Assembly: GCA_002104905.1 (NCBI GenBank)
Contig: MCFE01000418.1
Span: 1 to 64,000, forward strand
Direction of reading: 5' to 3'
Origin: Basidiobolus meristosporus CBS 931.73
Lineage: Eukaryota > Fungi > Basidiobolomycota
Length of the DNA stretch: 64,000 nucleotides
Shown here: positions 2,661 to 63,300 of the stretch, in pieces
Layout: each line of letters starts with the position of its first letter
Position numbering within the stretch: the first letter of the stretch is position 1
Made by a program: the position numbers and the translations under genes
The notes under the pieces: model-generated
The model's input: only the letters and a program-made list of their open reading frames with translations
Databases searched by the model: none
Told to the model about the DNA's origin: nothing

Positions 2661-5600
2661 CTCCCCCTCAACTAAATAATTTCTTAATCCCAATTTCTCT
2701 CTAAGGATCTCAAACTGTGGCCTAGCTAGTGGTTTTGTCAATATGTCTGCCACCATTTTGTCAGTTGGGCAGTAAACCAGCTCTACTAAGTTATTTTCTA
2801 CAGCTTCCCTCACAAAGTGATGCTGTATATCAATGTGCTTAGTTCTGGCATGATTAGTAGGATTTCTAGCTAATGAAATACAACTTTGATTATCCTTGTA
2901 AATACATGTTGGTTCACCTGAATTAAAACCTAAGTCTTTGAATAATTTTCGTAGCCATATAGCCTCCTTAGTTGCTTGACATGCAGCCATATATTCGGCT
3001 TCAGTTGTAGATAGTGCCACAGTTGGTTGTTTCTTGCAATTCCAAGTAATAGCTGCACCAGCATAAAGAAATACATAGCCTGTGGTAGAGCGTCTGTCAA
3101 TCAGATCTCTACCCCAATCTGAATCACTATAACCATCAAATTTTCGCCTATTAGCTGCTCCAGAGTATTCCAGTACCATATTTATGGTACCTTGTAGATA
3201 TCTGAAAATCCGCTTAACTGCTGCAATTTGATCTGATCCATAATTCTGCATGAATTGACTGACTATTCCAACTGCTACTGCAATATCTGGACGTGTAGAC
3301 ACCATCAAGTACATTAGGCTACCAACCATTGATTGATAGGGAAAGTTTTGGTCCATATTTGAGCCGTTTTCATCCATAACTGGCTGAGATTTGCTTAATT
3401 TCAGGTTATTGTCCATAGGGGTTGCTGCAGGTTTGCAATTTTCCATTTTGAAGCGTCTAAGAATGTCCCTGATGTACTTAGACTGATTCAGCACAATTTT
3501 CTGCGTAGGTATGTCAAATTTGACCTCAATTCCAAGAAAATAGCTCAATTTTCCAAGATCTTTCATCTCAAACTTGCTGAAGAGATCTGATTTCGTCTAT
3601 TTAAGTGCCTCTTGATCACTTGTAGCTATAATTAGGTCATCCACATAAAGAACTAGGATGATCACACCCTTTTTGAGCTGTTTCACATATATACTGTGAT
3701 CTGCAGTGCTACGAGAGAACCCAATTTCCTCTAGATATGTGTCAATCTTGTTATACCATGCTCTGGGTGCCTGCTTAAGCCCATACAACGATTTTCTAAG
3801 TTTGCACACCTTATGGGGGCTTTTTGGATCGGTAAAACCTTCTGGTTGCTCCATATATATAGTTTCTTGCAAATCCCCATTTAGAAAGGCTGTTTTGACG
3901 TCCATTTGGTGTAGATCTAGACTGTGTACAGCTGCCAGGGCTAGAACTGTCCTAATAGAGTTAAACTTGGCAACCAGAGCAAATGTTTCCTTAAAGTCTA
4001 GTCCCTGGATCTGGGAATAGCCTTTAGCTACCAATCTAGCCTTGTACTTATCAACGGCACCATTTGAGGTTATCTTGATCTTATAGACCCATCTACATCC
4101 TATTGGCTTTCTCCCATTTGGTAAATCTACCAGTTCCCACGTTTTTGCCTTGATCAGTGATTGGTACTCCTCCTGCATGGCTTGTTGCCACTTAGTAGCA
4201 TCTGGACCTTGCATTGCCTGTTCCAGATTCTGAGGTTTGGCACATAAGGCAAGATAAGCTTCTTCATGATCATTGGATGTCTGCCACCAGGATCCAGGGG
4301 CATTTCTTATTCTGGTAGATCTCCTAACTGGGATAATCTGTTCTGATCTGGAACTGGTAGAAGTATCTTCCATCTCTGGCTGGATTTGGTACGTATCTTC
4401 TTCATTTGTGTTGATTGCATCATCAGGCAGCTGGCCAATGATTTCTGTGGCTTTCTGATCTGAATTCTCCTCAAATACAACGTCCCTGCTCTTGATCAGC
4501 TTCTGAATTTTGCCATCATACACTCTATACCCTTTAGTACCTTCACAATACCCAAGAAAGATCCCTTTTCTACTCTTTGGTTCCAACTTTGAGCGTTTTT
4601 TGTCAGGGATGTGATAAAAAACATCACTGCCAAAGATCCTGAGGTGCTGGAGATCTGGTTTTTTGCCTGTATATGCTTCAAAGGGTGTAGAATCACGTAG
4701 TGCTGTTGTTGGGCATCTGTTCTTGATGTATACAGCGGTAGCAACAGATTCAGCCCAAAACTTGTAGTCCATTCCCTTATCATGTAGCATAGATCTTCCC
4801 ATCTCTACTATTGTTCTGTTTGCACGTTCTGCTACTCCATTTTGCTGTGGAGTATGGGGAACTGTGGTCTGTTGAAGTATACCAGTAGACAAGCAGTATT
4901 TTGCAAACTCCTTTGAGCAGTATTCTCCTCCATTGTCACTTTGTAGTACCTTCAATTTACACCCAGTTTGTGTTTCTGCCATGTTCTTGAAGTGCTTAAA
5001 CGTCTCTAAAGCTTCATCCTTTGTTTTGAGGAAGTACACCCATGTATATCTTGTCTTGTCATCAATAAACGTCATAAAGTATCTCTTGGCTCCAAAGGAC
5101 AGTGTTCTCATGGGGCCACATATGTCTGAGTGTACAATAGCCAATATTTCGGTGGTATTGATGCCTTCTGAGCTCTTGAAACGTTGCCTAGCTTGTTTGC
5201 CATATGAACATCCTTTACAAACATTCAATTTGATCGGAATTGAGTATTTTAGGCCCAAAACAAGCTGATTTTTCACCAATTGGCTCATTTTCTGTTCCCC
5301 TATGTGTCCTAGCCTCCTATGCCATGTCTCCCAGTTGGTTTCATCGGTTTCAGCAATGTTGACATACTCAGGTACAATGATCTTGCATTGTAACTTGTAT
5401 ATATTGTGATCTCTGATTCCCGAAGCTAATTTTTGTCCATTTTCACTCAATATTGAGCAGCTCAGCTTAGTAAAAACGAATTTCAGTCCCTGAGTAGTTG
5501 CTTTACTGACTGAGAGTAGGTTCTTAGCTATTCCAGGTACATAGAGTATGTCAGTCAGTTTTGCTGTTGTTGCCCCTGAGTTATCACTCATATTTAGTTG

Positions 5601-6572
5601 TATGGACCCACTGGCGGTAGCTTCCAATGCAGAGTTATCTCCCAGATAAACCTTTCTTACGGGAATAGTCTTTAAGTTGCTGAACCAATCCTTTATACCA
5701 CAAATATGCTGTGATGCTCCAGAGTCAATATACCATTCATTACTTCGGTTACTTGCACTCTCTTGTACAGTGACAAATAGCTGTTCATCAGTAGTTATAT
5801 GGTTTGCCTGCTCTAGTTTCTGTTTTTTGTCTGCTTGTTTCTTCTTGCATTCTCTTGCCCAGTGTCCTGGCTTCTTACAGTAGTTACAGCAGCCAGGTTT
5901 TCTTCGGTTTTGTTGCTTTCCCTTCTTTTCTGTATGCCTTTCTGAACTGAATAAAGCATTATCTTCAATTTTCTCTGCTTGGTCATTACGTCTGAGTTCT
6001 TCATGGAGAAGTCTTCCTTTGACATAGTCTAAAGTCAAGTTGTCTTCTCTGCTTTCAAAAGAAAGTATGAGTGGCTCATACTCGTCTGGTAGGCTGCAAA
6101 GCAGACAGAGTATCTTTTCTTCATCATCTACACCAGCATTAATACTGTAAAGTTCTTCTGCAAGTGTCTCCATTCTGGTAATGAGTTGTAGCATGTCATC
6201 ATCTGGCTTTTTTCTCATGTTGAAGAACTTTCGTTTCAAATAAAGCTTGCTTGATACTGACTTTGCTCTAAAGATCTTCTCCAAGGATTCCCATGCTGCT
6301 TTGGCAGTATTTGAGGCATGGATTTGTCCAATGAAGGAGTCTTGCACATTGATGCATATTGCATTGAAGGCCTTTCTCTCCTTCTCTTGAAACTTCTCCA
6401 CATCTTCTGCTGTTCCTTTGGGCTCAACTTCCTTTCCTGTTACTATATTCCAAAGCTTTCTTTCCTCAAGGTGGATCTGCATCTTGATTCTCCAAAGTCT
6501 GTAGTTCTTCCCATCAAACCTCTCCTTTACAGGGAAGATGTTGGTATTGCTTTGTTTGCTGGTAGAAGTCAT
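2655..6572 (-). pseudogene. Copia gag-pol polyprotein (1306 codons including the stop) with one in-frame TAG at 3597-3599
   Basis: The 991-aa and 303-aa ORFs are in the same frame (ALK*TKSDLFSKFEMKDLG). Motifs: CNYCKKPGHWAREC knuckle, WYIDSGASQH protease, WHRRLGH...CKGC, HSDICGP, QSDNGGEY, QNGVAER, YVDDL, YSDSDW, KHIDIQHHF. Confidence 0.95.
2661..2670 (-). promoter_or_regulatory. Polypurine tract of copia A1
   Basis: Minus strand TGAGGGGGAG lies immediately before the LTR start TGTTGAAATA. Confidence 0.9.
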
Positions 6573-19671: not shown

Positions 19672-20556
19672 TTACTCTTCATAATGCTCCAGACACATTT
19701 CTCTCAGTGGATGTCTTCTTGTATGAACATACTGTGCATTAATAAGTATCTTAACTATTTTACCTATTGTGCTGTTTTCTCCTATATATGACTTTCCTCT
19801 GTATTTACCTGCCAATATGCTGAATCTCTTCAGATATCCAAATGTGTGCTCTACCCCTACTCTGAAATGATTAAATATCCCATTGTAGAGCTTCTGCTTC
19901 CTGCTAAGTACACCATTTCTTGGCTTCCTATAAGCTGTAATACATCCTAATCTCTGACAATCCTCTCCTATATAAGCTGAGTCTGCCATACATTTCTCCC
20001 CTCTACTGAATTCATGATGATTCTCTACCCAGAGTGCTTTGTCATGCCTACCTCCAGCAAATGGCCCACTAAACCAGATGATGTTACCCTCAATGTCAGA
20101 CAGTGCTTGAAACTTCACACAGTGTGCCTTGTAATTGCCAGAATAAAAGTGCCTCTGCCCTCTAGAAGGTCTGTTAATCCTCACTGGGAAGGTATCCAAA
20201 ATACTCCTGATATGGAACCTGTTGCTGAACACTCTGGGATATGGAAGTCTATTGGAGCTTCTGAACCTAGTATTCCAAGCTTGCTCTAAGTCATTCATAC
20301 CCTCTGCAAGGTGGTTCTCCATTGCTGTCAGCTGGGAATGAAAGCTTATAGGACTTTTGTTGCCATGGATGGTGGGATGAAACCTTGTAGGACAATAGTT
20401 CTTGTAATAGCAGAGAAGCTTGACAAGGGATCACCTTGAGTAGATTGGGGTTGATGGTCCACAGTACTTGGAATAGATCTCCTCTAGTGTGTCAAAAGGA
20501 AATCCGGTGGTAGTGATGGGATTGATGAGAAAAGACCATTCAGATGAGTAAGTCAT
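19672..20556 (-). pseudogene. DDE_Tnp_4-type transposase, ~294 codons, with one TGA at 20431-20433
   Basis: Catalytic motifs ILDTF / MADSAY / RVGVEH and Q..YSG.YK.H.VKFQ. The frame extends upstream of the called 216-aa ORF (TTGFPFDTLEEIYSKYCGP), and the paralog at ~9.88 kb has AGA at the stop codon. The start is uncertain because the paralog has ACG. Confidence 0.85.
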
Positions 20557-30717: not shown

Positions 30718-32448
30718 ATTAGCCAGAACCTTTCTGCTAATATTTCTGCCACTCTCTGTCAATTCTAAGATTCTGCACTTAATTGTCCCTTTGGTTAAGC
30801 TAAGCTATTCAAGAGCTTTTAGTACACCTTTCTCTTTGATACAACAATGATTGAACAAAATGGGTTGGTAGGTGTATATACATAATGCACAACATGTCAT
30901 CAATTAATAGCTGAGACACTTTTGTAGAGGCCTCTAATTGGCATATTTCTTCTTTACCCACAAGTGAGTCTGTGTTATGGCAGTAGTACATTGTGCAGTC
31001 ACACCTAATGAGATAAAAGCTGACACATTTGACCATACTATGTATGATTTGCAAACATACCGTACAGATCAAATTTGATCAGTGGTATAACACCTATTTA
31101 TATGAGTGGTTAAACTGAATAGAAGTGTTGGGAGTACTCAGCCTTATGTGCCTCCTATGTCCTTTAACAGTGCATTCATGCTATGGATCTGAGAAAAAAC
31201 AAAGCATATATCACTTGCATTTGGCAGCTAGTAGGGCAAATGAAAATCCCCTATCACTGTTCTACCATCATGTATAACAAATACAAGGGTGCCAGTTCAA
31301 GCTAGGAGCTCCCACTGCTTGGGAGTCTGATGTTATTATGGAGAAGGGGCATGTTTCTGGTACAAATATGGAGCAACTTCCAATTCTTGGTCTCTAAACT
31401 CAGTCAAGTCCTCCAGCAGGACTTGCACTGTCAGCTAAATATCCCAGATATTTCCACCTGCTCCTTACAGGATGCATGCATATATTGAGTTATAACCGCA
31501 ATAGCCTTTCTGCATAGTAACTAGGTGTGCAACACTCTGTGAGATCCAATGAAACGTAAGTGGCTTGCCATTGGCTGGTCTGCCAGCAACATAAAAAGAA
31601 GTTACATTGGTTTTGTGCAAGTATGGTAGCCCCTAGGAGTGCCCATTTTGATAAAGGAAAACTGGTTAGCATGGGAGATTGCTTGTAAGACTGCACTCCA
31701 GATGCTTAAGGATGGTTCCATCAAGCTGGCGTACCTCAGTGTACCAGATTAAAGAGCAGAACTTATAGTCAACATAGGGCTGTACTATTGGAGACGTACT
31801 TGGTCAGGGTCTAGTATCATGGAGCAGCAGTGGCTAGAATTGGATGGCCATAGGCCACAACTATGAGTGTTGACCACGGTACGATATTACCCGACTGCAC
31901 GACGTTTTAGCCACATGAGTGGTAATGTCAACGCGCATTCTACCAAACCTCACAAATCGTATCTATGAAGCAACACGTCGAAGTCTCGTCGAGAGCGATG
32001 GATCGGGAGGAGGTGGTGTCCGATGGTTCCACTCGTATCTCCCCCGACCAGGGACGGTCATCCCGTGATCTGGATGGGATATGGCCTGCCATCTCGTATA
32101 TCTGAAACGACGATATGACACGCACATGACACACTGCTGAAATGATCCCTCGCGTGGTGGCTGATGCGCCCGCCTCCAAGGTACGATGGGAGTCCACAAA
32201 CCCGATCCATCCTGCGATAGCCCGTGCATTCGTCCAGCCGACGAATACACCATTCATTTCCATTCATCTGGATGCATCGGGCTGAGCCACCCAGCTGCGA
32301 ATGCCCCTCTGAAACGGAGTTTCACCGGATGTTGCGAGGGAGGGTCGCTACGCGTGCGAGAACAGTTATTCGGACGCATAAATACCAGGGCCTCCAAGGA
32401 GTCCACCCATCCCACTTCCACCCACCTCCTTCGACTTCCACCAGCAGC

Positions 32449-33057
32449 ATGAGACTCGTCGCCACCACCGCACTCTTCGTCCTGGCCTTCAGCCAGATCG
32501 CCACCGCGGCCAGCGTGGCCGGATTGAACGAGGCTGGTGATGAGAGTGCCAACATCGATCCCAGCTTCCGGGACTACGTGCCAAACTTCGGAGGGTTCAA
32601 GTCGGCAACGAAGAACCTGGCCTCGAGAACATACGGCATAGCCTCCCGGATCACCAAGGGGATCGGCAGCGGCCTAGGATACTTCCTTGGTGGCTCCGGG
32701 GCCCGTGGGAACTCCGGAGGTCGGGCTCGCGGGGCGATCGAGGGGGACATGGGCCGCGGCATCGGCCCCCAGATGGCAGGGAACTTCCGTGGAAGCGGAA
32801 AAGGCAACCTCGCCGATATCGTCGGTGGGAAGATCGATGGTGGTGGAAAGGGATCGGGCGGATTGAACTTCGGCAAAGCCCCCCGCAAGGGGATCAAGTT
32901 TGTTCCCCCCGTGGCCGGCGCGAAAGTGGGGGATTTCAAGGAGGGACTTGAATCGGCCAAAGGAAAGCCGGTCGTCTTACCCGTCAAGCTGGGCAAGGTA
33001 ACCAAGGCGGCGAAGGCGATCGGCCATTCTGCCCCCAAGCCCAAGGCTGCCCCTTAG
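32449..33057 (+). CDS. Secreted glycine-rich protein, paralog 1 (202 aa)
   Basis: Signal peptide MRLVATTALFVLAFSQIATA, acidic spacer, Gly-alternating core shared with two neighbours, Lys/Pro-rich tail. CATAAATA lies upstream, so the longer 32224 start is unlikely. Confidence 0.85.
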   Translation: MRLVATTALFVLAFSQIATAASVAGLNEAGDESANIDPSFRDYVPNFGGFKSATKNLASRTYGIASRITKGIGSGLGYFLGGSGARGNSGGRARGAIEGDMGRGIGPQMAGNFRGSGKGNLADIVGGKIDGGGKGSGGLNFGKAPRKGIKFVPPVAGAKVGDFKEGLESAKGKPVVLPVKLGKVTKAAKAIGHSAPKPKAAP

Positions 33058-33588
33058 AATCCGTTGTTCATGTACATGAATATAGAGCTTCCTAGATCAC
33101 AGTGTATTAAATAAACTACGCCCCCCTTTATTGAGAATTGTTGTGCATATCCTAAGCCACTATGGCCACATTGCTATGATGGTGTGCGGTTATCAGACAG
33201 TCCAACGGATGGGATGATGGTGTGCGATTATCAAAGACAGTCCAACGGATGGGATAATTGTAAGTTCAGGAAACGCCATGTGTGTTCTACTTGGCTTGTA
33301 GGCGAACGTTGATGAAAACACATGAGCCTTGGTTGTTAGTAGATCACCGCAACTAGGATGCCCGGCCACATCAGTAGCAAACAATTGATTTGACTGGTGA
33401 GAACAGCCATTAGCATGGCTCCACATGAGCAACAAGCATCGCCAAGTATTCCTGACTACACGTGGAGTGATCCCTTCCCCAGAAGGAAGGCCAATAAGCG
33501 CGAGATGAGATAAATGCAAACACTGAAACCAAGATTAAGTGGAGAACCAGTTTTTATTGAAGAACTTGAAGATTCTAATGCGGGGAAC

Positions 33589-34182
33589 TTAAGCCTCGTA
33601 TTCAGGCTCAGCCTCAGCATAACCAGCGCCATCCCCATCGCCGCCACCACGAACGGGTTGAACAGCGCGGATTGGTTGAATCGCGGGGCCACCGTAACCG
33701 CTAGCCCAGTCAAGTCCTTCATTGTAGTCATCATTCTTGTAACCAAGCACAGGGGCGTCAACCTTGAGTCCGCCACGGTAGCGGTTACCGAAACCTAATC
33801 CTCCAGATCCCTTACCTCCACCCTTGATCTCCCCTCCGAGAATGTCCTTGAAGTTACCGGCTCCCTTACCGCGGAAGTTACCGGCGAAGCCAGTACCAAA
33901 ACCGCGTCCGAAGTCACCTTCGAGGGCACCGCGAGCGCGACCTCCGAAGGAGCCTCCGATACCAGAGCCGTCCAGGACATGTCCAAGACCACTTCCAACA
34001 CCGACGGCAATTCTCTTACCGAGTCTACCGGCGTATCTTCCAATGGAGTTACCGATGTCGCCGAAACCGAATTCCTCGGTGGTGGCAGCTTCCTCGCCGA
34101 CCTCATTAATGTTCACGCTGTATGCGAAAGCGGTATGGCTGGCAGCGAGGGCAACAAGACCGGTGGCAACGATGAATCTCAT
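33589..34182 (-). CDS. Secreted glycine-rich protein, paralog 2 (197 aa)
   Basis: Signal peptide MRFIVATGLVALAASHTAFA. The core GSGLG...GGRARGALEGD.GRG...AGNFRG.G.GN..DI.GG.I.GGGKGSGGL.FG aligns closely with paralog 1. Confidence 0.88.
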   Translation of the reverse strand: MRFIVATGLVALAASHTAFAYSVNINEVGEEAATTEEFGFGDIGNSIGRYAGRLGKRIAVGVGSGLGHVLDGSGIGGSFGGRARGALEGDFGRGFGTGFAGNFRGKGAGNFKDILGGEIKGGGKGSGGLGFGNRYRGGLKVDAPVLGYKNDDYNEGLDWASGYGGPAIQPIRAVQPVRGGGDGDGAGYAEAEPEYEA

Positions 34183-34477
34183 GATGTCGGAAGATGGAGA
34201 GGAAGTGGAAGAGTGTGAGGGATGAGGAATACTGGAGCGAGTGGCCCCCTTTTTAAAGAGATTCCGGCCACCGTCTGAAACGCATTATGAATCAGGGGCT
34301 GCAGCTTTCAGAATGGGATACTTGAAATGTTCCCTCTGTCACACACTCTGTTTGAGCCCCTGACCGGGATCCTATGCGATGGATCTGGCTCCTTGTTACA
34401 GACAATGGCAACATAGCATATGGGTATAAAGCCCGTACTACCCTGGATCTATCCATTCCCATCCTACCTCTGCCACC

Positions 34478-34891
34478 ATGAGATCCTTCACCGCCATCAC
34501 TCTTGCAGCCATAGCACTCAGCCAAGTTGCTGTGGCACTTCCACAGGATGTTGCGGAAGGTACTGTCGACGCCAGCACCCAGGACTCCGCCCTTTATATC
34601 GGCGGCGGCCTGGGGAGCAGAATTGGCAGATATCTCCGGGACAACATCTCTGTTGACGGCTCAGGAGCCATCGGTGGAGTAGGCCAAGGTGCGTTCAGAA
34701 GTCACCACATCCCGGGATTGAGAGGATCCATCAATGGGAACTTCGGAGCCACTGGTGCCGGTTCCCTCAGGGATGGCCTGTTCCGTGGGGACGGGGACAT
34801 TGGAGGCGGTGGCTCAGGTAGGATCGGGGTGGGCAAAGGATACAACGGGGCTGATGATTACGATGCGGTTGACCCCTTGGATTACGAATAA
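34478..34891 (+). CDS. Secreted glycine-rich protein, paralog 3 (137 aa)
   Basis: Signal peptide MRSFTAITLAAIALSQVAVA, diverged core (DGSG..GG.GQGA...GNFG..G.G.L.D...GDIGGGGSG.IGVG), TATAAA about 55 bp upstream. Confidence 0.82.
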   Translation: MRSFTAITLAAIALSQVAVALPQDVAEGTVDASTQDSALYIGGGLGSRIGRYLRDNISVDGSGAIGGVGQGAFRSHHIPGLRGSINGNFGATGAGSLRDGLFRGDGDIGGGGSGRIGVGKGYNGADDYDAVDPLDYE

Positions 34892-35173
34892 TGTTTCCAT
34901 TTTTACGGATTACGAATAGTGTTTCCATACGAAATAAACCGATGGCGACTAACCCTAACCCCCTCCCCTCCACCTCATACATCCATTCGGCATTGCTGAG
35001 AATGATTAATTTATTTGGAACTATGGTTGTGCTCAATACGTGGTCGTAAGGCGAATGTTACATGAATCTAGAATATGATGATGTTAAAGAGCAGTGTGAC
35101 GCATGTGCTGGTGAACGCATATTCGGCAGTTAGAACTCAAAAATCGGTGGGGTGAATGAGCAGGTTTGGCTGT

Positions 35174-36417
35174 CTACTTTCTGTTCAAGACACGCTTGGC
35201 GACTTGAGCAATGATGTCGGTGGTGGGAAGGGAGAGGTCTTCCAAAGGCTTGGCGTAAGGCATAGGAACATCGGCGCCGGTGACTCTCTCGACCGGGGCA
35301 TCGAGGTAGTCGAAGGCCTCGGATTCCATGATCTGGGCACAGATCTCGGAACCGACACCGAATTGAGGCCAGCCACCCTCGATGGTGATGAGACGGTTGG
35401 TCTTCTTGACCGACTTGATGATGGTGTCGATGTCCAAAGGACGGATAGAACGCAGGTTGATGACTTCGGCGTTGATGCCCTCCTTGGCGAGGAGTTCGGC
35501 GGCGGCCAAAGCATCACCAACCGGCTTGGAGTGAGCAACCAAGGTGACGTCGGTACCTTCGCGCTCGACCTTGGCCTTGCCGATTTCGATCACGAAATCC
35601 TTGTCAAGAGCCTCCTCAGAGATGTCGAAGGATGAGCCGTACATGATTTCGTTCTCGAGGAAGACGACTGGGTTAGGATCACGGATAGCAGCCTTCAAGA
35701 GACCTCTGCAGTCCTCGGAGTTCCAGGGGGAGATAACCTTGAGACCTGGAACGGAACCGTACCAAGCGGCATAGCATTGGGAGTGCTGAGCAGCCACACC
35801 AGCAGCAGCGCCGTTAGGGCCACGGAAGACAATGGGGCATTGGACTTGGCCACCAGACATGTAGTGGGTCTTGGCAGCGGAGTTGACAATGTGATCAATA
35901 GCTTGCATGGCGAAGTTAAAGGTCATGAACTCAACCACAGGCTTGAGTCCACTCAAGGCACTACCAACGGCAATACCGGCGAACCCGGCTTCAGTGATGG
36001 GGGTATCGATGATACGCTTGGGGCCGAATTTGTCCAAAAGTCCCTTGGAAACCTAGAAATACCATTCGCTTAGTAAGACGCGGGTGAAAAACACCGAGCA
36101 GAAGCCCGTGGCGTACCTTGTAGGCGCCGTTGTATTGAGCAACTTCTTCACCCATGAGATAGACCTTGTCATCTCTGGTCAACTCTTCCTCCAAAGCAGA
36201 GTTAAGAGCATCACGAACAGTAATCTGAACAGCGAACGGTTAGGGTCGGACTGCGGCAAGCAAAGGGGGAAGAACATACCTGCTTGGTGGCAGTGGAGTT
36301 GAAACGGGCCTGGGCAAAGAGTCTTCCGGTGTTGCAGGCAGCACCCAAAGCGAGCTTTCTGGTGTTGGCCTGAACGGAGCTTCTAGCCACAGAGGTAAGT
36401 GCAGTGCGGAACAACAT
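35174..36417 (-). CDS. PDB1: Pyruvate dehydrogenase E1 beta subunit, mitochondrial (3 exons, ~374 aa)
   Basis: Motifs [63 protein letters not shown]. Introns 36225-36279 and 36053-36116; N-terminal presequence. Confidence 0.97.
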
Positions 36418-36949: not shown

Positions 36950-37240
36950 GACAGGACTGATATTGAATGGTTTACTAGCTAGACTGATCCGATATTGAGT
37001 GGTCTTCTAGCTAAACTGATCTGATATTGAATGGCTACTCTACTGATATTGAGTGGTCTTCTAGCTAAACTGATCTGATATTGAATGGCTACTCTACTGA
37101 TATTTCGGGGTCTATTCGATTGATATTTCAACGGTCTACCGATACTTCGTGGATCTCAATGGCCTACCGATACTTCTTGGTCTAGCGTAGGCATTGCGAT
37201 TCATTAGAGTAGGTATTGCGATCCATTAGAGTAGGCAGGC
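36950..37240. repeat. Minisatellite cluster in the 3' region of the secreted-protein gene
   Basis: Perfect 54-bp unit x2 (36991-37098) built from TGATATTGA(A/G)TGG subunits, plus a 22-bp unit x2 (37193-37236) spanning the stop codon. Confidence 0.85.
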
Positions 37241-37927
37241 GCGAACGGGGATCCCAAGAAGGTTGAGATTAAGGTTGATCAGACGGTTGCAGTTTTGCTG
37301 TGGCTGGGTGCTGGGTGAGGGGGATGGACTAGCGGTTGGGCTGGGGGTAGTGGTGGGTGTGGTTCCATCCCCACCGTTGTTTGGATTTCCACCACCAGTG
37401 TTGGGATTGTCGGTGTCTTTGGGACTGTCATCCTTACTATCTTTTGGGTTTCCATCGTCCTTGGAGCCATTGGATCCGGAGTCACCATCGGCGTCTTTGG
37501 CATCACCACCGTCATTGCTTGAGTTGTTCCCTCCCTTGCCATCCTTGCCGTTTGTAGGCTCTCCATCTGAACCTTTCCCTCCATTCCCGTTCCCACTTGA
37601 TTTGCCTGCCCCATGATCCCCTGGGCCCATACCAGTGTAGTTTGGTTTTCTACCGATCCAGCCCGCTAGCACTGGGGACCCGCGATCATGGCCGTAGTTA
37701 GGTCCGTGTGCGGAAGGTATCCTGAATCTTCTGTTCGAGGCCGCCTCCTTGGTCCTGCTAAGCCACTGGTCGAAATTCTTGATGGAGAATTTGTTACGCA
37801 ACGGCCTCATGGCGCTCCTGGCGGTGGACACCATCCTACCGGGGGCCTTCGATTGGGTGGACTCGATGACGGCGGACTGCACGATGTTGGAGGCCAGCAG
37901 AACGGATATAGCGAGGAGTAGCTTCAT
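37226..37927 (-). CDS. Secreted low-complexity protein (233 aa) with a Cys-flanked hydrophobic tail
   Basis: Signal peptide MKLLLAISVLLASNIVQSA, basic segment, G/D/N/K linker, P/T/S stalk, C-terminus CNRLINLNLNLLGIPVRACLL. Confidence 0.85.
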   Translation of the reverse strand: MKLLLAISVLLASNIVQSAVIESTQSKAPGRMVSTARSAMRPLRNKFSIKNFDQWLSRTKEAASNRRFRIPSAHGPNYGHDRGSPVLAGWIGRKPNYTGMGPGDHGAGKSSGNGNGGKGSDGEPTNGKDGKGGNNSSNDGGDAKDADGDSGSNGSKDDGNPKDSKDDSPKDTDNPNTGGGNPNNGGDGTTPTTTPSPTASPSPSPSTQPQQNCNRLINLNLNLLGIPVRACLL

Positions 37928-54711: not shown

Positions 54712-55095
54712 TTATGCTTGGTGTAGAGTGATCAACCGCAACATCTCCCCTCCAAGCTTGCAGTTGCTGAACTTGATGGTTTCTGGCTTGCAGTAGAGCA
54801 TGCTAGCTCCAATGATCTTCCTCCACATGTCCTGCGAGCAGCCAGAGTTAGGCTCTATCATGGAAAACTGGTTCCAGCCGCCCTGGTTCAGCCCGATATA
54901 GTCGGCGGCTTGGTGCAGTCGTTCCATATCTTCCTTACTACCTGGCAGGCAGGATACATAACATTCCTGGTATCTACCTGTGATAGGTCGGCAACTACCA
55001 CTGAACTCAAAGGTTAAGTTAGCCACACTGATGTAGGCACTCATTAGTAGTATACTAAGTCTAAGCCCAAGCCTAAGCCAGATTCTCTTGTGCAT
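54712..55095 (-). CDS. Small secreted cysteine-containing protein (127 aa, 6 Cys)
   Basis: Basic-then-hydrophobic N-terminus ending SVA, six Cys, TATAAA about 40 bp upstream. Confidence 0.6.
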   Translation of the reverse strand: MHKRIWLRLGLRLSILLMSAYISVANLTFEFSGSCRPITGRYQECYVSCLPGSKEDMERLHQAADYIGLNQGGWNQFSMIEPNSGCSQDMWRKIIGASMLYCKPETIKFSNCKLGGEMLRLITLHQA

Positions 55096-55697
55096 TCTCC
55101 TCGCAACCTGCTCCTCACCGGCCCTCGTCTCATTTATAGTACCGGCAGTTCAAACACAGTCAGGACAATGTTTCCGAGTATCAGACCAGGCATATTGGAT
55201 GTTTGAGCTGATACTGCTAAATTTATGTCGGAGTGTTGTTACAGGTATGTTCACTTGATTATTGCTAAATATAGCGATGTGTTTGGTTCTAAATTGTGAT
55301 TCTGTATATACTCCAAACAAAATATATCACCAGATAACAGTTTAGAATAACTTCCCTATATATTCATAAATAAGCTGGAATAATAATTGCTACTTGCAGC
55401 CACTGAACTCCATTGATATGTTGTGTGGGAGAAAGGTAACAATTTGTTGATTTTGGCATTTGCAGTAACAACATACTTGTCTTCTGTAGCCAGAATTCTT
55501 GGAGCTAAGGAAAATTGTTTCCTTGCTGGTTGATCCATTATTAAAACAAAGCCCATTGTGAATCTGTTCTACTGAACAGTGAATCTACTGATAATTGTTG
55601 TTTAAAGTGTATCCTTTTGTGATATAAATCAACAACTGAGCCATAACAAGCATTGTAAGCCCAAGTTGTTATACATTTTGTAATTACACCTAAGTAT

Positions 55698-56028
55698 TGT
55701 TGTAATAATTTTGGAGATATTCAAAGTGATTGGGAGAACAGGTAGATTATGTGGTTTTCACTTAATAATTCATTAAATGTAAAAGTAGTATTTATACTTT
55801 TACATGCTCTTGGCATTATAACTATGTTAAATAGGCTACAGAAGATCCCAAAAACATGTGTGCAAAGTTTGGGGCTGTTTGGACAACTTTGAGAATTTTT
55901 ATGTTCTGCATATATATTCTAAGTAAATTCCAACAAGGAATTTGATCAATATTCCCTAGGATTGGAAGGTAATGACACAAGTCACCAAGTTAAATGAATA
56001 TTTAGGTGGAATTACAAGTTTTACAATA
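55698..56028 (-). repeat. Diverged copia family B LTR
   Basis: Reverse-complement homologue of 60377-60725; no matching TSD. Confidence 0.85.
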
Positions 56029-57110
56029 AAATGATGTCTAAAATATATGTATGTATTGCTGACATCAAAAGCTAGATTTCTACCAAATTGAATACATCCT
56101 TGATGGTCTTGAAATAATGTAATTTTGTCTTTGGGCACAAGCTCGAATCTCTGAAGACCTTTCTTAGCCACCTTGCTTCTTTTGTAGCTTCACATATGGC
56201 CATATACTCTGCCTCTGTGATGAAAAGTGCTACAGTTAGCTGCTTGAATTTAATGAGATTGCTCATATGCAGCAAAGAATGGTATATCCAACAGTGGATA
56301 TTCTGTCTTCCAAGTTTTGTCCCTAATCTGCACCATGGTATCCCAAATAATCCTTCACAGAGTTGCTATAAGTGCACTTTGAGCAGATATTAGTAGTTCC
56401 TTTAAAGTATCTAAGAACCTGCCTAACTGCTGCAGTATGATCAGAACAATAGTTCTGATTATGTTGGCTGGCAACTCCAACTGATTATGAGATATCTGAG
56501 CATGTGCCTAGTATGGTATACTTCACACCACCAGCAATTGACTGTTAAGAAAAGTTTGGGATGTCAGGTGATAACAAGCTCTCCTGACTTGGTTGAGTTT
56601 TGACCAAGTTAAGGTATGACTTCAACAGGATAGCTGTCAGTTTGCAGCCTTCCATTTGGTGCTTCTTAAGTATACTTGGAGCATACTTGAACTGGCTTAG
56701 GGTGATATTCTAGGTACTCATGTCTATGGAGAACTGTATCCCTAAGTAGTAACTGAGCTCTCCTAGATTGTACATTCTGAACTCCTTACATATGCTGGTT
56801 TAGCCTCTTCCAACGTTTTTTGGTTTATGGAGGATACAATAAGATCATCGGCACACAAAGCTAATAGGAGTAGATTTGCTCTCTCTGACTTAAAATAGAC
56901 ACTATAGTCAGTAGTACTTCTTTGGAAACACAAGGAATCTAACTAGCAATCTATTTTGCAATTCCAAACTCCTGATGATTGATTGAGACCACATAGAGAC
57001 TTCTTGAGCTTGCAAATTAGATGAATATTATCTATGTCTACAAACCCATCAGGCTGGCTTATGTACATGACCTGATCAAGTTCCCCATTCCAAGTTTCTC
57101 AAAATTGACA
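56029..57110 (-). pseudogene. Decayed copia RT/RNase H fragment
   Basis: VALFITEAEYMAICEATKEARWLRK and RHHFI motifs. Confidence 0.8.
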
Positions 57111-57479
57111 ACTCTCAATATCTCTGTTGTTAGCTGATGGGCAGGCAAGCAAACAAAATCTCCAGGAGGAGACTAGGCCAACTAGCATCCATACCAAATT
57201 TGGTAATTAGCTGCCCATTACTTCCATCAAAAATTGCATTTGAAATTTTGAACCAAAAACACCAGCTGAATACCATCAAAATACCATTTTAAAACCAGCA
57301 GAATACCAGCTGAAAATTAGATGAGTTCCAAGTTTGAGATCTCTCATAGAGACAGGGATATCTTGATCCTGTGAAGTGGTAACAAAAGCTACTAAAGCTC
57401 AAAATCAGGAAGCCAAATAAGAGTTTTAGATCTTTTGAGTAAAGGATCCACCCAATCTTAGTTTTTTATGTAACAATGC

Positions 57480-58420
57480 ACTGAGTTGAATGAAATTCCT
57501 CTTGAGAGAAGCAAAAGTTGCGGGGCATTGAGGGCATTGCATATTGTAAGTAATGCTTGTCTACTCAACCTTTATTACAGCAAAAGTTTGGAAACTTGCT
57601 GTCAGGGAAAGGGGTATGGTCCTGTAAGTGACTTTTCCAAAGTGCAAGCAGGTGGTCAGGGGCCATATTTTTGGGTGTTTCTGCTTTCAGTAACATTCTA
57701 GCTAGATCCACAACTAGAGGAGAGTTGGGCAGGATATGCCAACAGGAAGGCTTATGGTAGTGCTGCTGATAAAGCCATTGTTTAACTGTAAGGCTAGTGA
57801 GCTGTTGGGGCTTTGCAAGGAAGGAAGCTCTACAGAGTATTATGCTGAATTGATATATGTATATCCCAAAGTCTCTTTCAGTGAAAGTACATAAGGAGAT
57901 TCAGGCAAATCATGGACTAGGGTCCTAATACACTGATTGAGGAACTTCTCTAAATGATGGAAATCACAAGTTGAGAGAGAAAGGAGTTGGACACCAAGCT
58001 CAAATACTGGATATTGCACTCCTTCAGAAGCAGGGAGATTTTCTGGACTGGGGTAAACGTACTTACAGCAATGAGAAGCCTTTATGAAGCCTGCCTGGCA
58101 ATGGTACTACACTTTGACAAGTGCAACTTTGCCTTGACACCATGATGATGCAGAGGAAAGCCAAGATATAGAGCACTTTACTTAGGCTCAATGAGGGGAC
58201 CTTTGAGCAGTAACTGAGCAGCCTAGTGGGATTATCTTTGGGATGAAAAGGCTAGGATGCATTTCTGACAAGTATGCTCATTGATGGCTGTATCTTATAT
58301 AGGAGAAGCAGTAGATATGCTGATGTCATAAGTACAAAGAGTCAGTAGGCTCTGAGGGATGGCACATACTAGAAGTGGGAAATCATGTAAAAAGATGAAA
58401 AAGAGCAGGGGCCCTAGTAC
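57480..58420 (-). pseudogene. Possible non-LTR (LINE) ORF2 remnant
   Basis: Minus-strand frame with LYLGFPL...TPVQKISLL and downstream LWKSHL...FC...DKHYL. Heavily decayed. Confidence 0.4.
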
Positions 58421-58541
58421 TGTCCATTAAGCCACACCACTGGGCACAAGATAGCACTCAGAGGAGTATTTGGGGTGCAGGATGGAGGTAGCATTATGAG
58501 GGAACAATGAGCACATAAGCAGTGTCACAGCAGGAGAAGAG

Positions 58542-60376
58542 ACCCTATGAAAAATAATTTGGTTCCACAGGTGGATCCAATTTGGATCAGCTGTCAGGAT
58601 CTTGTTTGGAGACCACTATAATACCAACAGCTTGGAATTAGTGAATCTCTTGACAATCTTACAATGTGATCACAACAGTGTTTTGCTAATTTTACTGCCA
58701 AATGAAGTTATTAAACTTGACAGGGTTTAATTGGAGCTGTGACAATAATCATGTTGCATTGTTGCAGTCTCAATGCACTCTACAACCAATTTAAATGGAT
58801 CTAACTGGCCAGGTCATCCAATTTCCTTATATGGCAAAAAACTTGACAGTATTTTGATGGCCTCACAGTGAGTTTCTGATGGCATTATCATAGCTATATG
58901 GCAGCTTACAGCTAGTTCTGTATTTTGCTACTGTGCCAATTTACCAAATGGTATTTCCTTTATCTACCTTTCCTTGTGCAATTCATATATCTCACTGTAG
59001 GATCACCCCTCTTTATTTGCTTACCCACTACTACCTTGGGTGTTCCACATATAGTTGAATCAAAAAAAACTATGGCCTCCTGCTTACTAACCTCTACAAA
59101 TGCACACACCTGCCAAAATTGACATACTTCTATCACCTCAACTTTAAAGCTTTATAGTGTGATACTTGCATAGTTACCATATACCTTGTACTGCCAGTAA
59201 CATTTACATCTTACAAACATATGCTTAGTTGTCACCACTTCTGCAATGAATACCTCCTGAATATCTGCAAAGAACTTCTTGGTATTTAGCCAATATATTC
59301 CTTCTCCCTGCTGGATTCTAGTCACCCTTATAGGTGTGCTCTAGCTTTTGCTTGTGTGAATTCCCTATTGAATGGTGTAGAAGTTAACATGTGACCATGA
59401 AAAATGCGGCATACCTTGATAGAGCTTTCCTAATAGAAATTAGTTGCTTGTGGCACCCAACCCAACTTTGCATTACTTAACTGCTTACCCATGCATTGGG
59501 GCTGCTTAGCTTCTTTATGCCATAGACATAGGTGTCTCTATGTGCACATCTGTTCTCAGTACTTTCCAACTCTTCCTGGCTGTCCTCCATGTGCCAGCTC
59601 ATTACATCCACAATGGACTTGAAGGTAATATTCATGATGAGATTGGGATATGGTAGTACCTGCAACTTGACTCATCTTCCATCTCTCCACGCATCTGCTC
59701 CATAGGAAACTCCCAAAAGGTGAAGCAAGGCCCAATATTCTCCACACACCAAGCAAGACAGAGTAGAGAATGGATACAGTGGTGGCAGAGATCTACATGT
59801 TCAGCTTTATGTTTGTAGTATAGCTGCTCAAATCCTGTTACAACTCCTTGCACAGCAGCTGTAGATGTGTCAAGTAGGCATTGGTGATCTGCTTCTGAAT
59901 AAATATTCCTAAAATGTCCACATTTGACTCCCAATGCTTCCAGTGTACTCTTGGTAGGAGTGGCTTTAGAACACAACTTGAATAAATACACATCCAGTTC
60001 ATCCAATCTTTACATTTGTATTATTGCATATGCATATAAATATTGATTGGAGCCCAAGAGAGGTACTTAGGGTAGTGGATACTCTGTAATATCTTGTCAA
60101 TTCTTTCAAATTTCCCTGGTATCTCAAAGGGCTCATTTAGCTTGAAATGGCCCATGTACTACTTGGTCATCAGTATAGGTATATTGTAGAAAAGCAAACA
60201 CATTGCACTCAGTGGAAAGCTTTTCCTCCAATAGATACCTTCTATCTTACATATCTCTGGTTTCTAATTGATTCCATATTCCAGCCAATGGCTTATAGCT
60301 TGTCAACTTTGCTGCAATTGCATGCTGACTTCTGTACATTCTCTCTGTGGGAAGATGATGTTCTCAGCGTTGGTAT
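58542..60376 (-). mobile_element. Degenerate CACTA/CMC-type transposon, copy C, interrupted by copia B
   Basis: Terminus (A)CCCTATGAAAA at 58542 and CVENIGPCFTFWEFPMEQM. Confidence 0.75.
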
Positions 60377-63300
60377 TGTTGTAAAGATTCGTAATTCCAC
60401 CTAAATATTCACCTAACTTAGTCACTTAGATCATCACCTTCAAATCCTAGAGAATACTGACCAAATTCCTTGTCGGGATTTACTTTGAATATTTTCACCA
60501 AAATACCAGGTACCCAGAACATGAAAATTTGATAAGTTGTCCAAACAGCCCCAAACTTTGCACACATGTTCTTGGGACCTTCCTTAACCTATTCTACGTG
60601 TTTGTAATGTCAAGATCAGGTAAAAGTATAAATACTACTTTTACATTCAATATATCATTAAGTGAAAACCACATAATCTACTTGTTCTCCCAATCACTTC
60701 CAATATCTCCAAGACTCTTACAACAGGTTATGAGCCCCAAGCTGTCACTCTCTGCAATGTCTACTACTGCTATTACTGGAATTTTTCCCTCTGCTGAAAA
60801 GTTGGATGGATCTAACTACCAAGTGTGGAAGGTGAAGATGAAGATGCTGCTACAAGAAAGAGGCCTTTGGGATATTGTCATGGGAGAAGAATGCCCTCCT
60901 AAAAACGTGGGAGAGGAAGCCTTAAAGTACCAGAAGAAAGAACAAAGTGCCTTTAACTGCATTTGCCTTAATGTCAAGGACAAATTGCTAATTCAATGCT
61001 CAAGAGCAAAAACGGCAAAGAATGCCTGGAAGGCACTAGAAGACACCTACCAATCATGTTCAGCTGCCAAGAAAATGTATCTGAGAAGAAAATTCTTTAC
61101 TACAAAGATGCTGCCAGGAGAAGAAATGAGAAATCTAATTAACAGAATTACCCTGCTGGTAGATGAGATGGAATCTGTGGGCGTACCAACTCCTGATGAG
61201 GATGTGATAGTTACCATCCTGAATAGCCTGACAGACAAGTTTCAGGGCCTTGTATTAGCCCTAGAGTCCAGAACTGAAGATTTGACCTTAAATTACGTAT
61301 ATGGAAGGCTCCTGGATGAAGAATTAAGAAAATCAAGCGCCAATAAGAAGGAAGAAGAAAATGCTTTAATAAGCAATGATAACCAACAAAGGAGGTACCC
61401 AAGACCCTACAAAGGCAACAGCAACCTATTTTGCAACTACTGCAAAAGGAAAGAACACACATCAGACTGGTGTTTCACAAAGAGAGATTATCAGCAAAAG
61501 AAGCCTGAATATGGAAATGCTGCAACAACTGAAGATAGACTATTCATATCTGCACTAAATATGACCACAAACAAGGATTCTCAGACGTGGTATATTGACT
61601 CTGGAGCTTCTCAACACTTTACACACCAAAAAAAACTTTTTACCCAATATCATGAAATTCCAATTAAGAAGGTTTTCATGGGTGACGATAGAACACTTGA
61701 TGCAGTGGGAGAAGGAACTATCCAAGTAAACCTTAGAAGCAGTGAAGGAAGCCTTACACTGACCTTTAAAGAAGTACTCTATGTACCAGAAATAGCCAAG
61801 AACCTACTCTCTGTAAGCAAGGCCACAGCAGAAGGACTCAGTTTCAGTTTTGACAATTCTGGATGCAGGATCACTGATCAAAATGGTGCTCATATTGCTT
61901 TGGGCATCAGAGATCAGAATCTATACAAGTTGACTTATATTCCATCATATCTGGAAGCCAATATAAGTAACTTAAATGAAGAAACACCAATGCTTTGGCA
62001 CAGGAGATTTGGACACATCAATTTTGATTATTTGCGTAAAATGATCAAAGATCAGCTAATTTCTTGAGTGAAAATTGATCCCCCAGCTATTTTGGAGCAC
62101 TGTGAAGCCTGCATATATGGGAAACAAGTCAGACAACCATTCAAGAGCTCTGGGTTAATCAAAACTAAGAAAAAATTAGATCTAATTCACTCAGATCTGT
62201 GTGGACCTATGCAAAATTTATCCTTAGGCAGGATGAAGTATTTAATCACTTTTATTGATGATTATACAAGATACACATGGGTCTACTTCATGGAGAGAAA
62301 GGAAGAAGCTCTGTCTAAGTTCAGGGAGTTTAAAGCCATGGTGGAGAGAGAAACTGGGGAAAAAATCAAGAAAATACGCTCTGACAATGGTGGAGAATAT
62401 ACCTCAAAACTCTTCATCCACTTCTGCAAAATTCATGGGATAAAGCAAGAGACTACTGTACCATACTCCCCACAGCAAAATGGAGTAGCAGAACGAGCTA
62501 ACAGATCAATAATTGATATGGCAAGATCTATGATCCATGATCAAAAATTATCCTATGATTTTTGGGCGGAATCAGTTGCCACTGCTGTATATCTTAAAAA
62601 TAGGAGTTATAACAGAATACTTCGTGATTCTACTCCATTTGAAGCATGGTATGGATACAGACCAAGTGCAGAACATCTAAGAATATTTGGGTGTACAGCA
62701 TATGCCAAAAAACTGGCCGGAAATCAGTCAAAATTTGAGCCAAAAAGTGTAAAATGCATATTTTTGGGCTACTGCAATGAGAGTAAGGCATACAGACTCT
62801 ACAATACCAAAGCAAAGAAGCTGATCAAGTCCAGGGATGTGTTGTTTGATGAAAATTCAAAATTTTCACAAAAAATGACATCAGATGATGACAAAAATTT
62901 GATCTCAAGTCCACCAATTGTCAGGATTGAATCAGAGCAAAACAATGAAAATTTTTTCACTCCAGAGGACTCTACAACCGTGGTTCAGCCAGAATCAGTG
63001 CCCAGGAATATCCCAGAAGTGATCATTCCAGTATTAAATGCCCGGAGATCCAATCGGACAAGAAATAGCCCAAATTGCTATATCAATGAGGGTACAAACT
63101 TAGCCTATGCCTATTCAGTCCATATTGATGAACCCCAGACTGTAAAAGAGGCCCTAAATAGCCCTCAGACGAAGTTTTGGAGATCTGCAATGACTGAGGA
63201 ATATCAGGCCCTGATGGAAAATCAAACTTGGGACTTAGTCAAATTACCAATCAACCGAAAATCAATTGGATGCAGATGGGTCTTTAAGACAAAATACAAG

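What the first reader, a model, noticed from the sequence alone, without database searches (positions are those of the whole stretch)
32449..34891. Cluster of three secreted Gly-rich paralogs with a prepro-peptide layout: candidate new antimicrobial or structural family
All three have a signal peptide, a short acidic spacer, a ~65-aa core and a variable tail (Lys/Pro-rich, or acidic and Tyr-rich). The core has about four segments with Gly at alternating positions (GSGARGNSGGRARGAIEG, AGNFRGSGKGN, GKIDGGGKGSGGLNFG). There are no Cys. The pattern suggests a thin beta-meander and recalls insect Gly-rich antimicrobials (attacin/diptericin/gloverin) or self-assembling wall/adhesive proteins. I recognise no fungal family for it. 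The genes are arranged tail-to-tail then head-to-head at the TE border.
Basis: partly seen in the sequence, partly recalled or inferred. Interest (0 to 1): 0.75.

Follow-up and report, generated by a model that had tools for sequence, protein, structure and literature searches.

The report
Basidiobolus-only secreted glycine-rich protein family
Three neighbouring genes of the frog-gut fungus Basidiobolus encode exported, cysteine-free, glycine-rich proteins that share a strictly conserved 80-residue two-faced core, belong to a small family found only in this genus, match no known family or fold, and have no known function.

Summary
Three intact intronless genes encode true paralogs: A 32449-33057 (+), B 33589-34182 (-) and C 34478-34891 (+). 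Each has a 20-residue signal peptide, an acidic spacer, a Gly-rich core and a variable tail, with no Cys.

Their similarity exceeds what composition gives (z 4.9-33 against shuffles). Codon differences fall mainly at third positions.

I found eight family members, all in Basidiobolus: six in B. meristosporus and two in B. ranarum. An exhaustive phmmer search of 1.84 billion representatives, scans of bacterial genomes and JGI metagenomes, Pfam, NCBIfam and PDB added nothing else.

- The core is 80 residues, gap-free in six members.
- Gly is not significantly periodic. The hydrophobic residues are (period 2 and 4, z 5-7.5). An extended chain would have one face of alternating hydrophobic and Gly residues and one charged face.
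- A Lys-Arg site before the core occurs in only 3 of 8 members.
- Only A is strongly cationic (pI 10.3). Six of the others are acidic or neutral; P0002 is mildly basic (pI 8.7).
- AlphaFold gives no fold (pLDDT 44-45).
- There is no sequence link to attacin, gloverin or diptericin.

My best guess, at low confidence, is a self-assembling extracellular coat, matrix or adhesive protein. An antimicrobial precursor is the main rival. The scan noted several other Gly-rich secreted families in this genome, but not this one.

The parts
32449..33057 (+). Gene A, 202 aa. Signal peptide 32449-32508, spacer 32509-32670, 80-aa core 32671-32910, Lys/Pro-rich basic tail 32911-33054. Mature pI 10.3, net charge +16.
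   Evidence: The identical 202-aa protein is in the protein collection (P0003).
33589..34182 (-). Gene B, 197 aa. Signal peptide 34123-34182, acidic spacer ending in Lys-Arg (34012-34017), 80-aa core 33751-33990, acidic Tyr-containing tail 33592-33750. Mature pI 5.1.
   Evidence: The sequence is held letter for letter in the ESM Atlas, but is not in the 15-billion-protein collection.
34478..34891 (+). Gene C, 137 aa, short form. Signal peptide 34478-34537, spacer, 74-aa divergent core 34643-34864, 8-residue tail ending in Asp-Tyr-Glu. Mature pI 4.6.
   Evidence: The identical protein is P0005. The closest relative is P0007, with 63% core identity.
32377..32384 (+). TATA-like box (CATAAATA) 65-72 nt upstream of the ATG of A, followed by a CT-rich leader.
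   Evidence: Read directly. Promoter function is inferred.
34250..34257 (-). A/T box (TTTAAAAA on the minus strand) 68-75 nt upstream of the ATG of B, followed by a CT-rich leader that shares CCACTTCC with A.
   Evidence: Read directly. Promoter function is inferred.
34425..34430 (+). TATAAA box 48-53 nt upstream of the ATG of C. B and C share a 295-bp divergent intergenic region (34183-34477).
   Evidence: Read directly. Promoter function is inferred.
33110..33115 (+). AATAAA 53 nt after the stop codon of A. Equivalent AATAAA signals lie at 33553-33558 (minus strand) for B and at 34933-34938 for C.
   Evidence: Read directly. Polyadenylation function is inferred.

Best explanation
These three genes belong to a small family restricted to the genus Basidiobolus. 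I found eight members in three subfamilies.

Shown:
- The layout is a signal peptide, a short acidic N-terminal piece with a conserved (L/I)-N-E-G motif, a positionally conserved 80-residue Gly-rich core, and a fast-evolving tail that is basic and Lys/Pro-rich or acidic.
- Hydrophobic, mostly aromatic residues recur every fourth position of the core, with Gly two residues away and charged or polar residues in between.

Inferred:
- In an extended chain, one face would be built of alternating bulky and Gly residues, and the other face would be charged.
- The monomer is disordered. It assembles outside the cell into sheets, films or a gel through the apolar face (aromatic side chains packing against Gly, plus Arg/Lys-aromatic contacts).
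- The charged tails tether or tune the assembly on wall or spore-surface polymers.
- The role would be a coat, matrix or adhesive protein, for instance on aerial spore-bearing structures or in the sticky tip of capilliconidia.

That this is a real secreted orphan family is well supported. The assembly mechanism is a guess.
For: The genes are real.
- The ORFs are intact. Each has a TATA-like box, a CT-rich leader and an AATAAA.
- Codon differences are biased to third positions, and A-B core dN is 0.30 against a saturated dS of 1.38.
- Relatives exist in a second species, B. ranarum.

The family is restricted.
- phmmer of A against 1.84 billion representatives found only Basidiobolus proteins.
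- Profile searches added only P0006 and P0007, both from B. meristosporus.
- No relative was found in 185,579 bacterial and archaeal genomes or in JGI metagenomes.

The core is constrained.
- It is 80 aa without indels in six members, with 76-82% core identity between the closest cross-species pairs. Tails differ in length (8-117 aa), charge (-7 to +7) and sequence.
- A-B dN is 0.30 in the core against 0.81 in the tail.

The core is two-faced.
- Hydrophobic residues give period-2 and period-4 power at z 5.4-7.5 in five of seven members.
- By phase, one position in four is 63% hydrophobic, the position two away is 50% Gly, and the two in between are 25% and 39% charged with the rest mostly Gly or polar.

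Other points.
- Monomer disorder: AlphaFold2 pLDDT is 44-45 and ESM Atlas pLDDT is 0.40-0.41.
- Neighbouring A (pI 10.3) and B (pI 5.1) carry tails of opposite charge.
- Basidiobolaceae capilliconidia carry adhesive material on their beak (PMC13370150).
- Strict hydrophobins are rare outside Dikarya, found in 1 of 6 Zoopagomycota genomes (bioRxiv 10.1101/2022.08.19.504535).
Against: - No expression, localisation or biochemical data exist for any member.
- There is no GPI signal, no Ser/Thr-rich stalk, no Cys and no known wall-anchoring repeat.
- Gly at 22-28% argues against stable beta structure in a monomer, and AlphaFold gave weak helices rather than strands.
- The family is small, whereas typical wall or adhesive families are larger.
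- A Lys-Arg site in one subfamily and a net-positive core (+1 to +8 in six of the eight members; C is -1, P0007 +2) fit a processed peptide as well.
Confidence: 0.4

Rival explanations
1. Precursors of Gly-rich antimicrobial proteins. The signal peptide is removed, the acidic N-terminal piece acts as a neutralising pro-region, and the net-positive amphipathic core is released. The core then acts on bacterial envelopes in the gut, dung or litter niche. This would be analogous to, not homologous with, insect attacins and gloverins.
For: - The core has net charge +4 to +8 in five of eight members, and the spacer is acidic (-1 to -4) in seven of eight; A's is +1.
- A canonical Lys-Arg lies directly before the core in B, P0001 and P0002.
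- The proteins lack Cys and are disordered, as long Gly-rich insect AMPs are in water (from memory).
- Earlier notes of this scan report other amplified cationic Gly-rich secreted precursors in this genome (untested here).
- The cluster sits at a TE border about 44 kb from a chromosome end, a typical site for fast-evolving secreted families.
Against: - Lys-Arg is absent from five of eight members.
- No conserved cleavage site separates the core from the tail.
- Six of eight mature proteins are acidic or neutral (pI 4.6-6.9), and C's core has net charge -1.
- There is no match to Attacin_N, Attacin_C, gloverin or any other AMP model in Pfam.
- The gap-free 80-residue conservation is stricter than is usual for composition-driven Gly-rich AMPs.
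Confidence: 0.25
2. Membrane-inserting beta pore formers. The alternating apolar/polar core oligomerises into a beta-barrel in a target membrane.
For: - The hydrophobic period-2 pattern runs in phase over 80 residues.
- The ESM Atlas model of B had its nearest, weak structural neighbours among bacterial outer-membrane beta-barrels, with TM 0.33-0.42.
Against: - Those matches rest on a model with pLDDT 0.41 and TM below 0.5.
- They were not reproduced for paralog A, whose neighbours were unrelated folds.
- AlphaFold2 predicted no strands.
- There is no homology to any known pore-forming family.
Confidence: 0.08
3. Lineage-specific small secreted proteins with a host- or insect-directed (effector-like) or other unrelated role. 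In this reading the Gly-rich core is merely a flexible scaffold.
For: - It is an orphan family, it is secreted, it lies next to a TE block, and its tails evolve fast.
Against: - The most conserved part is the Gly-rich core itself, not the tails. The core is therefore the functional module.
Confidence: 0.15

Closest known systems
Insect Gly-rich antimicrobial proteins (attacin, gloverin, diptericin G-domain)
   Same: Secreted, Cys-free and Gly-rich, 12-20 kDa, made with a pro-piece and unstructured as monomers (properties of the insect proteins recalled from memory).
   Different: No sequence match to any Pfam model at E<=1, and at E<=10 only one chance match to an unrelated CRISPR domain. Most members here are acidic or neutral. 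A dibasic site is present in only 3 of 8. The period-4 hydrophobic/Gly register is a feature of this family and was not compared with the insect proteins.
Interface-active coat proteins of aerial microbes (fungal hydrophobins, Ustilago Rep1 repellent peptides, Streptomyces chaplins)
   Same: Small secreted amphipathic proteins that would assemble into films or fibrils on surfaces. Rep1 is Kex2-processed (from memory), and a Lys-Arg precedes the core in one subfamily here.
   Different: None of the eight Cys residues that define hydrophobins is present. There is a single core rather than an array of Kex2-separated repeats. There is no sequence similarity. Assembly is untested.
Aromatic/Gly low-complexity assembly domains (FG-type and hnRNP-type Gly-rich domains, keratin 'glycine loops', plant Gly-rich wall proteins)
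   Same: Aromatic residues spaced by Gly, with Arg/Lys nearby, and predicted disorder. The comparison itself is from memory.
   Different: Those domains conserve composition rather than position. This core is positionally conserved and indel-free over 80 residues across paralogs with saturated dS. It is also exported through a signal peptide.
Other Gly-rich secreted orphan families noted by this scan in the same Basidiobolus genome (CxWGC-ended cationic peptides, xxxG-repeat orphan, GPGGN/GPGY silk-like giant)
   Same: Same genome, same theme of exported Gly-rich genus-specific proteins, and also of untested function.
   Different: This family has no Cys and no tandem repeats, and a different conserved core. 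My protein searches retrieved none of those families. A look-up of the scan's notes by sequence found no look-alike.

Membership tests
Attacin / diptericin / gloverin (insect Gly-rich AMPs) | Significant match to the family's profile models (Pfam Attacin_N, Attacin_C, gloverin) | tested here: not met
   hmmscan of the three window proteins at E<=1 and of seven members at E<=10 found no such family.
Attacin / diptericin / gloverin (insect Gly-rich AMPs) | Pro-piece removed at a conserved basic site | tested here: inconclusive
   Lys-Arg lies directly before the core in B, P0001 and P0002 only. A and C have Ser-Arg, and three members have no equivalent. Cleavage itself cannot be tested here.
Attacin / diptericin / gloverin (insect Gly-rich AMPs) | Antibacterial activity | not testable with these tools
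   Needs assays.
Hydrophobins | Eight Cys in the conserved pattern, and a match to the Pfam hydrophobin models | tested here: not met
   No member contains any Cys. No Pfam hit.
Kex2-processed repeat proteins (for example Ustilago Rep1) | Several tandem peptide repeats, each bounded by Lys-Arg | tested here: not met
   There is one core per protein, at most one Lys-Arg before it, and that in only 3 of 8 members.
Glycine-zipper and outer-membrane beta-barrel families | Match to the Pfam Gly-zipper or OMP models, or a confident structural match | tested here: not met
   No Pfam hit. Atlas structural neighbours had TM below 0.5 on a model with pLDDT 0.41, and were not reproduced with paralog A.
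The Basidiobolus family defined here | Signal peptide, (L/I)-N-E-G piece, conserved Gly-rich core with invariant G-N-F and G-x-G-x-G motifs, and no Cys | tested here: met
   Alignments A2, A3 and the 8-sequence alignment have 18-19 invariant columns. Pairwise z is 4.9-61 over shuffles.

The most novel reading that the evidence does not exclude
Basidiobolus has evolved its own Cys-free, amphipathic, Gly/aromatic assembly module. The 80-residue core would form an interfacial beta film or cross-beta gel. The module would do the job that hydrophobins, repellents or chaplins do elsewhere, or would form the glue of the capilliconidial tip. Paralogs with oppositely charged tails (A basic, B acidic) would co-assemble or dock on different wall polymers. 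This would be a new class of fungal surface material.
Probability: 0.2. Interest if true: 0.75.

Novelty: new variant of a known kind. Interest (0 to 1): 0.4.

Why it matters
The biology of spore surfaces and adhesives is almost unknown at the molecular level in early-diverging fungi, where hydrophobins are rare. Basidiobolus depends on aerial discharge, on sticky capilliconidia for insect dispersal, and on survival in bacteria-rich guts.

This family is genus-specific and exported, and selection holds an unusually regular two-faced core in place. That makes it a concrete and cheap candidate for either a new self-assembling biomaterial or a new class of long Gly-rich antimicrobial protein. It also adds to a pattern noted elsewhere in this scan: this genome carries many unrelated Gly-rich secreted orphan families.

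Without expression or biochemical data, it remains an uncharacterised orphan family.

Tried and rejected
Searches that found nothing:
- Pfam and NCBIfam scans of all members.
- A PDB profile search gave only E 0.26 noise.
- ESM Atlas feature search for B and A had no usable hit. The structural neighbours were weak and inconsistent between paralogs, so the beta-barrel hint from B was dropped.
- Bacterial and archaeal genome scan and JGI metagenome scan with the A4 profile found no relative, so recent horizontal transfer from sampled prokaryotes is unlikely. The first attempt, with A3, failed for lack of a conserved stretch.
- Literature searches for Basidiobolus plus glycine-rich, locus tags or secretome found nothing on these proteins.
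- tblastn of the family against the window found no further copy.

Models without value:
- AlphaFold2 on full-length B and on the core alone, each with a 7-sequence alignment, gave pLDDT 44-45. I ran no fold search on these models because the matches would be meaningless.

Readings rejected:
- 'Gly alternation' as the organising feature is rejected. The Gly period-2 z is about 0.
- The Pro-rich antisense ORFs (32574-33044 minus, 33824-34225 plus) are not the real genes. They mirror the Gly codons, lack start and signal features, and the third-position bias fits the Gly frame.

Not possible:
I could not read the loci of P0001, P0002, P0004, P0006 and P0007, so synteny and cross-species dN/dS were not computed.
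Full report
**What is there**

The window holds three uninterrupted ORFs at exactly the coordinates given:
- A, 32449-33057 (+), 202 aa.
- B, 33589-34182 (-), 197 aa.
- C, 34478-34891 (+), 137 aa.

A and B are tail-to-tail. B and C are head-to-head across a 295-bp spacer.

Each gene has the marks of a complete gene, all read:
- an A/T box 48-75 nt upstream of the ATG (CATAAATA, TTTAAAAA, TATAAA);
- a pyrimidine-rich leader;
- an AATAAA 31-53 nt after the stop codon.

The 202-aa and 137-aa products are present letter for letter in the public protein collection as P0003 and P0005. B is in the ESM Atlas letter for letter.

The long Pro-rich ORFs on the opposite strands are mirror images of the Gly codons, not genes.

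**Genomic setting**

The cluster sits at the junction between two blocks:
- To the left is a 32-kb block at about 40% GC, with copia-type LTR retrotransposon and Harbinger-type transposase ORFs.
- To the right is a block at 50-60% GC. The next gene there is a transketolase-family gene, apparently pyruvate dehydrogenase E1 beta (35174-36037, minus strand).

Earlier notes of this scan place a telomere about 14 kb beyond the window's end. I did not check this.

**Are they paralogs beyond composition?**

Yes.
- MAFFT gives 46% (A-B) and 31% (A-C) identity, with 33 invariant columns.
- With signal peptides removed, Smith-Waterman scores exceed 300 shuffles of the partner. The z-scores are 33 (A-B), 6.3 (B-C) and 4.9 (A-C), and 10-12 for C against other family members.
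- A-B codon differences by position are 74/62/123, and 55 of 89 identical residues use different codons.
- By Nei-Gojobori, dS is saturated (above 1.3), so the duplications are old. A-B dN is 0.30 in the core, 0.62 in the signal peptide plus spacer, and 0.81 in the tail.

The core is the constrained part.

**The family**

- A phmmer search of A against 1.84 billion cluster representatives returned only four proteins, all from Basidiobolus.
- Word-seeded searches with B, with a 6-sequence profile and with a profile of the divergent members added P0006 and P0007. The two profile searches scored only the 8000 candidates sharing most words, so they were not exhaustive.

The eight members are listed below.

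| Species | Members |
|---|---|
| B. meristosporus CBS 931.73 | A, B, C, P0002 (K493DRAFT_306016), P0006 (K493DRAFT_365930), P0007 (K493DRAFT_318933) |
| B. ranarum | P0001 (K7432_017432), P0004 (K7432_011057) |

Core identities define three subfamilies.

| Subfamily | Members | Core identity |
|---|---|---|
| I | A, B, P0001, P0002 | 52-80% |
| II | C, P0007 | 63% |
| III | P0004, P0006 | 82% |

Subfamilies I and III occur in both species, so the split predates the species.

P0002 (B-like) and P0007 (C-like) both lie on a contig of 69,356 bp, presumably the same scaffold. This suggests a second, duplicated pair.

No relative was found in 185,579 bacterial and archaeal genomes or in JGI metagenomes. 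No Pfam, NCBIfam or PDB match exists either.

**Anatomy**

1. Signal peptide. It is 18-20 residues ending in A-x-A or similar. P0001 has an extra 24 residues that look like a mis-called start. Export is inferred from the sequence; no predictor was available.

2. Acidic N-terminal piece. It carries a conserved (L/I)-N-E-G motif with an invariant Glu. It is 22-54 residues long with net charge -4 to +1. Subfamily I members B, P0001 and P0002 end it with L-G-K-R, a canonical Kex2-type site. A and C have Ser-Arg there, and the others have nothing comparable.

3. Core. It is 80 residues and gap-free in six members; subfamily II has small deletions. Several Gly residues and a G-N-F motif are invariant. 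Net charge is +1 to +8, except C at -1 (P0007 is +2).

4. Tail. It is 8-117 residues. It is basic and Lys/Pro-rich in A (+7), mixed in P0004 and P0006, and acidic in B, P0001 and P0002 (-4 to -7). Six of eight proteins end with Tyr one or two residues from the C-terminus (YEA, DYE, DYE, AYD, VYA, VYE). Subfamily I also shares a short (D/E)-(Y/F)-x-E-G-(L/S)-(E/D) motif after the core.

No member has Cys. Gly makes up 15-28% of the mature proteins. Mature pI is 10.3 for A, 8.7 for P0002 and 4.6-6.9 for the other six.

**The regularity of the core**

Gly period-2 power has z between -0.7 and +0.2 against 1000 shuffles.

The periodic residues are the hydrophobic ones:
- Period-2 power has z 5.7-7.5.
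- Period-4 power has z 5.4-7.3.
- Both figures hold for five of seven members. A and C are weaker.

Pooled over seven sequences by position modulo 4:
- One phase is 63% I/L/V/F/M/Y/W.
- The phase two residues away is 50% Gly.
- The two intervening phases are mostly charged, polar or Gly residues (25% and 39% charged). One is 4% hydrophobic and the other 19%.

Because the register is kept over 80 residues, it fits an extended geometry. One face would have bulky residues alternating with Gly, and the other face would be charged. It fits a single alpha-helix poorly, since a period of exactly 4 would wind around the helix. This is inference.

**Structure**

- AlphaFold2 with the 7-sequence alignment gave mean pLDDT 43.9 for B and 45.2 for its core alone. 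Only a few weak helices appeared and no strands.
- The ESM Atlas models have pLDDT 0.40-0.41.
- B's nearest Atlas neighbours were bacterial beta-barrels at TM 0.33-0.42. A's neighbours were unrelated folds. I treat both as noise.

I ran no fold search on the low-confidence models. The monomer is best described as predicted-disordered. An assembly-induced structure is neither supported nor excluded.

**How it most likely works**

Shown:
- The family is real, restricted to this genus and under selection.
- The core is the conserved module, and it has a strict two-faced pattern.

Inferred:
- The proteins are exported.

Guessed (confidence about 0.4):
- The proteins self-assemble outside the cell through the apolar face.
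- The variable charged tails dock on wall or spore-surface polymers or tune co-assembly. The neighbours A and B carry opposite net charge.
- The result is a coat, matrix or adhesive.

Supporting context is thin. Basidiobolaceae capilliconidia bear adhesive material on the beak (PMC13370150). Strict hydrophobins were found in only 1 of 6 Zoopagomycota genomes surveyed (bioRxiv 10.1101/2022.08.19.504535).

The main rival (about 0.25) is an antimicrobial precursor.
- For it: the acidic spacer, the Lys-Arg site in three members, the net-positive core, and the bacteria-rich niche.
- Against it: Lys-Arg is not conserved across the family, no site separates the core from the tail, and most mature proteins are acidic or neutral.

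Pore formation (about 0.08) and an unrelated effector-like role (about 0.15) remain possible.

**Comparison with known families**

- Membership of the attacin, gloverin or diptericin families fails on sequence.
- Membership of the hydrophobins fails on Cys.
- Kex2-processed repeat proteins do not fit, because there is one core per protein rather than an array of repeats.

The nearest analogies are functional ones, not homology:
- long Gly-rich insect AMPs;
- interface-active coat proteins;
- aromatic/Gly low-complexity assembly domains.

This core differs from the low-complexity domains by being conserved position by position.

Earlier notes of this scan list several other Gly-rich secreted orphan families in the same genome. 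None is this family, and my protein searches retrieved none of them.

**Verdict**

This is a real, undescribed, genus-specific secreted protein family with an unusually regular amphipathic Gly/aromatic core. Its function is unknown.

Orphan secreted families at TE borders are common in fungi, so the finding is moderately interesting, not striking. Its value lies in being a cheap test case for a new extracellular assembly material or a long Gly-rich defence protein in an early-diverging fungus.

No sequence was altered or joined.

Noticed in passing
window:33176-33255: A 40-bp unit is tandemly duplicated (2.1 copies, 92% match) in the 3' intergenic spacer between genes A and B.
   Followed up: no
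window:34879-34928: A 22-nt direct repeat (95% identical, 28 nt apart) spans the stop codon of gene C. The end of the coding sequence (Asp-Tyr-Glu-stop) is repeated just downstream, which suggests a small duplication at the 3' end.
   Followed up: no
window:32449-34891: Gene A has much higher third-position GC (0.75) than its paralogs B (0.51) and C (0.58). The neighbouring housekeeping exon is at 0.68. The cause could be expression level, biased gene conversion or age.
   Followed up: no
B. meristosporus contig of 69,356 bp (not fetched): P0002 (B-like, 185 aa) and P0007 (C-like, 133 aa) are both recorded on a contig of 69,356 bp, probably the same scaffold. This looks like a second, duplicated B/C-type gene pair.
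   Followed up: partly
window:1-32000 and 55000-64000: These are AT-rich (GC about 0.40) transposon blocks. They hold copia-type gag-pol ORFs at 2655-6572 (-) and 60529-62067 (+), and a Harbinger-type DDE_Tnp_4 transposase at 19672-20322 (-). The 23-kb gene island lies between them.
   Followed up: partly
window:20916-22049 (+) and 37226-37927 (-): ORFs of 377 aa and 233 aa have no Pfam match at E<=0.001.
   Followed up: no
window:32574-33044 (-) and 33824-34225 (+): Long Pro-rich ORFs lie antisense to genes A and B. They are mirror images of the Gly codons (GGN/NCC), not genes, and could mislead gene callers.
   Followed up: yes
P0001 (B. ranarum KAK9759513): The annotated protein carries 24 extra N-terminal residues ahead of the conserved Met-Lys signal-peptide start. 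The start codon is probably mis-called.
   Followed up: no
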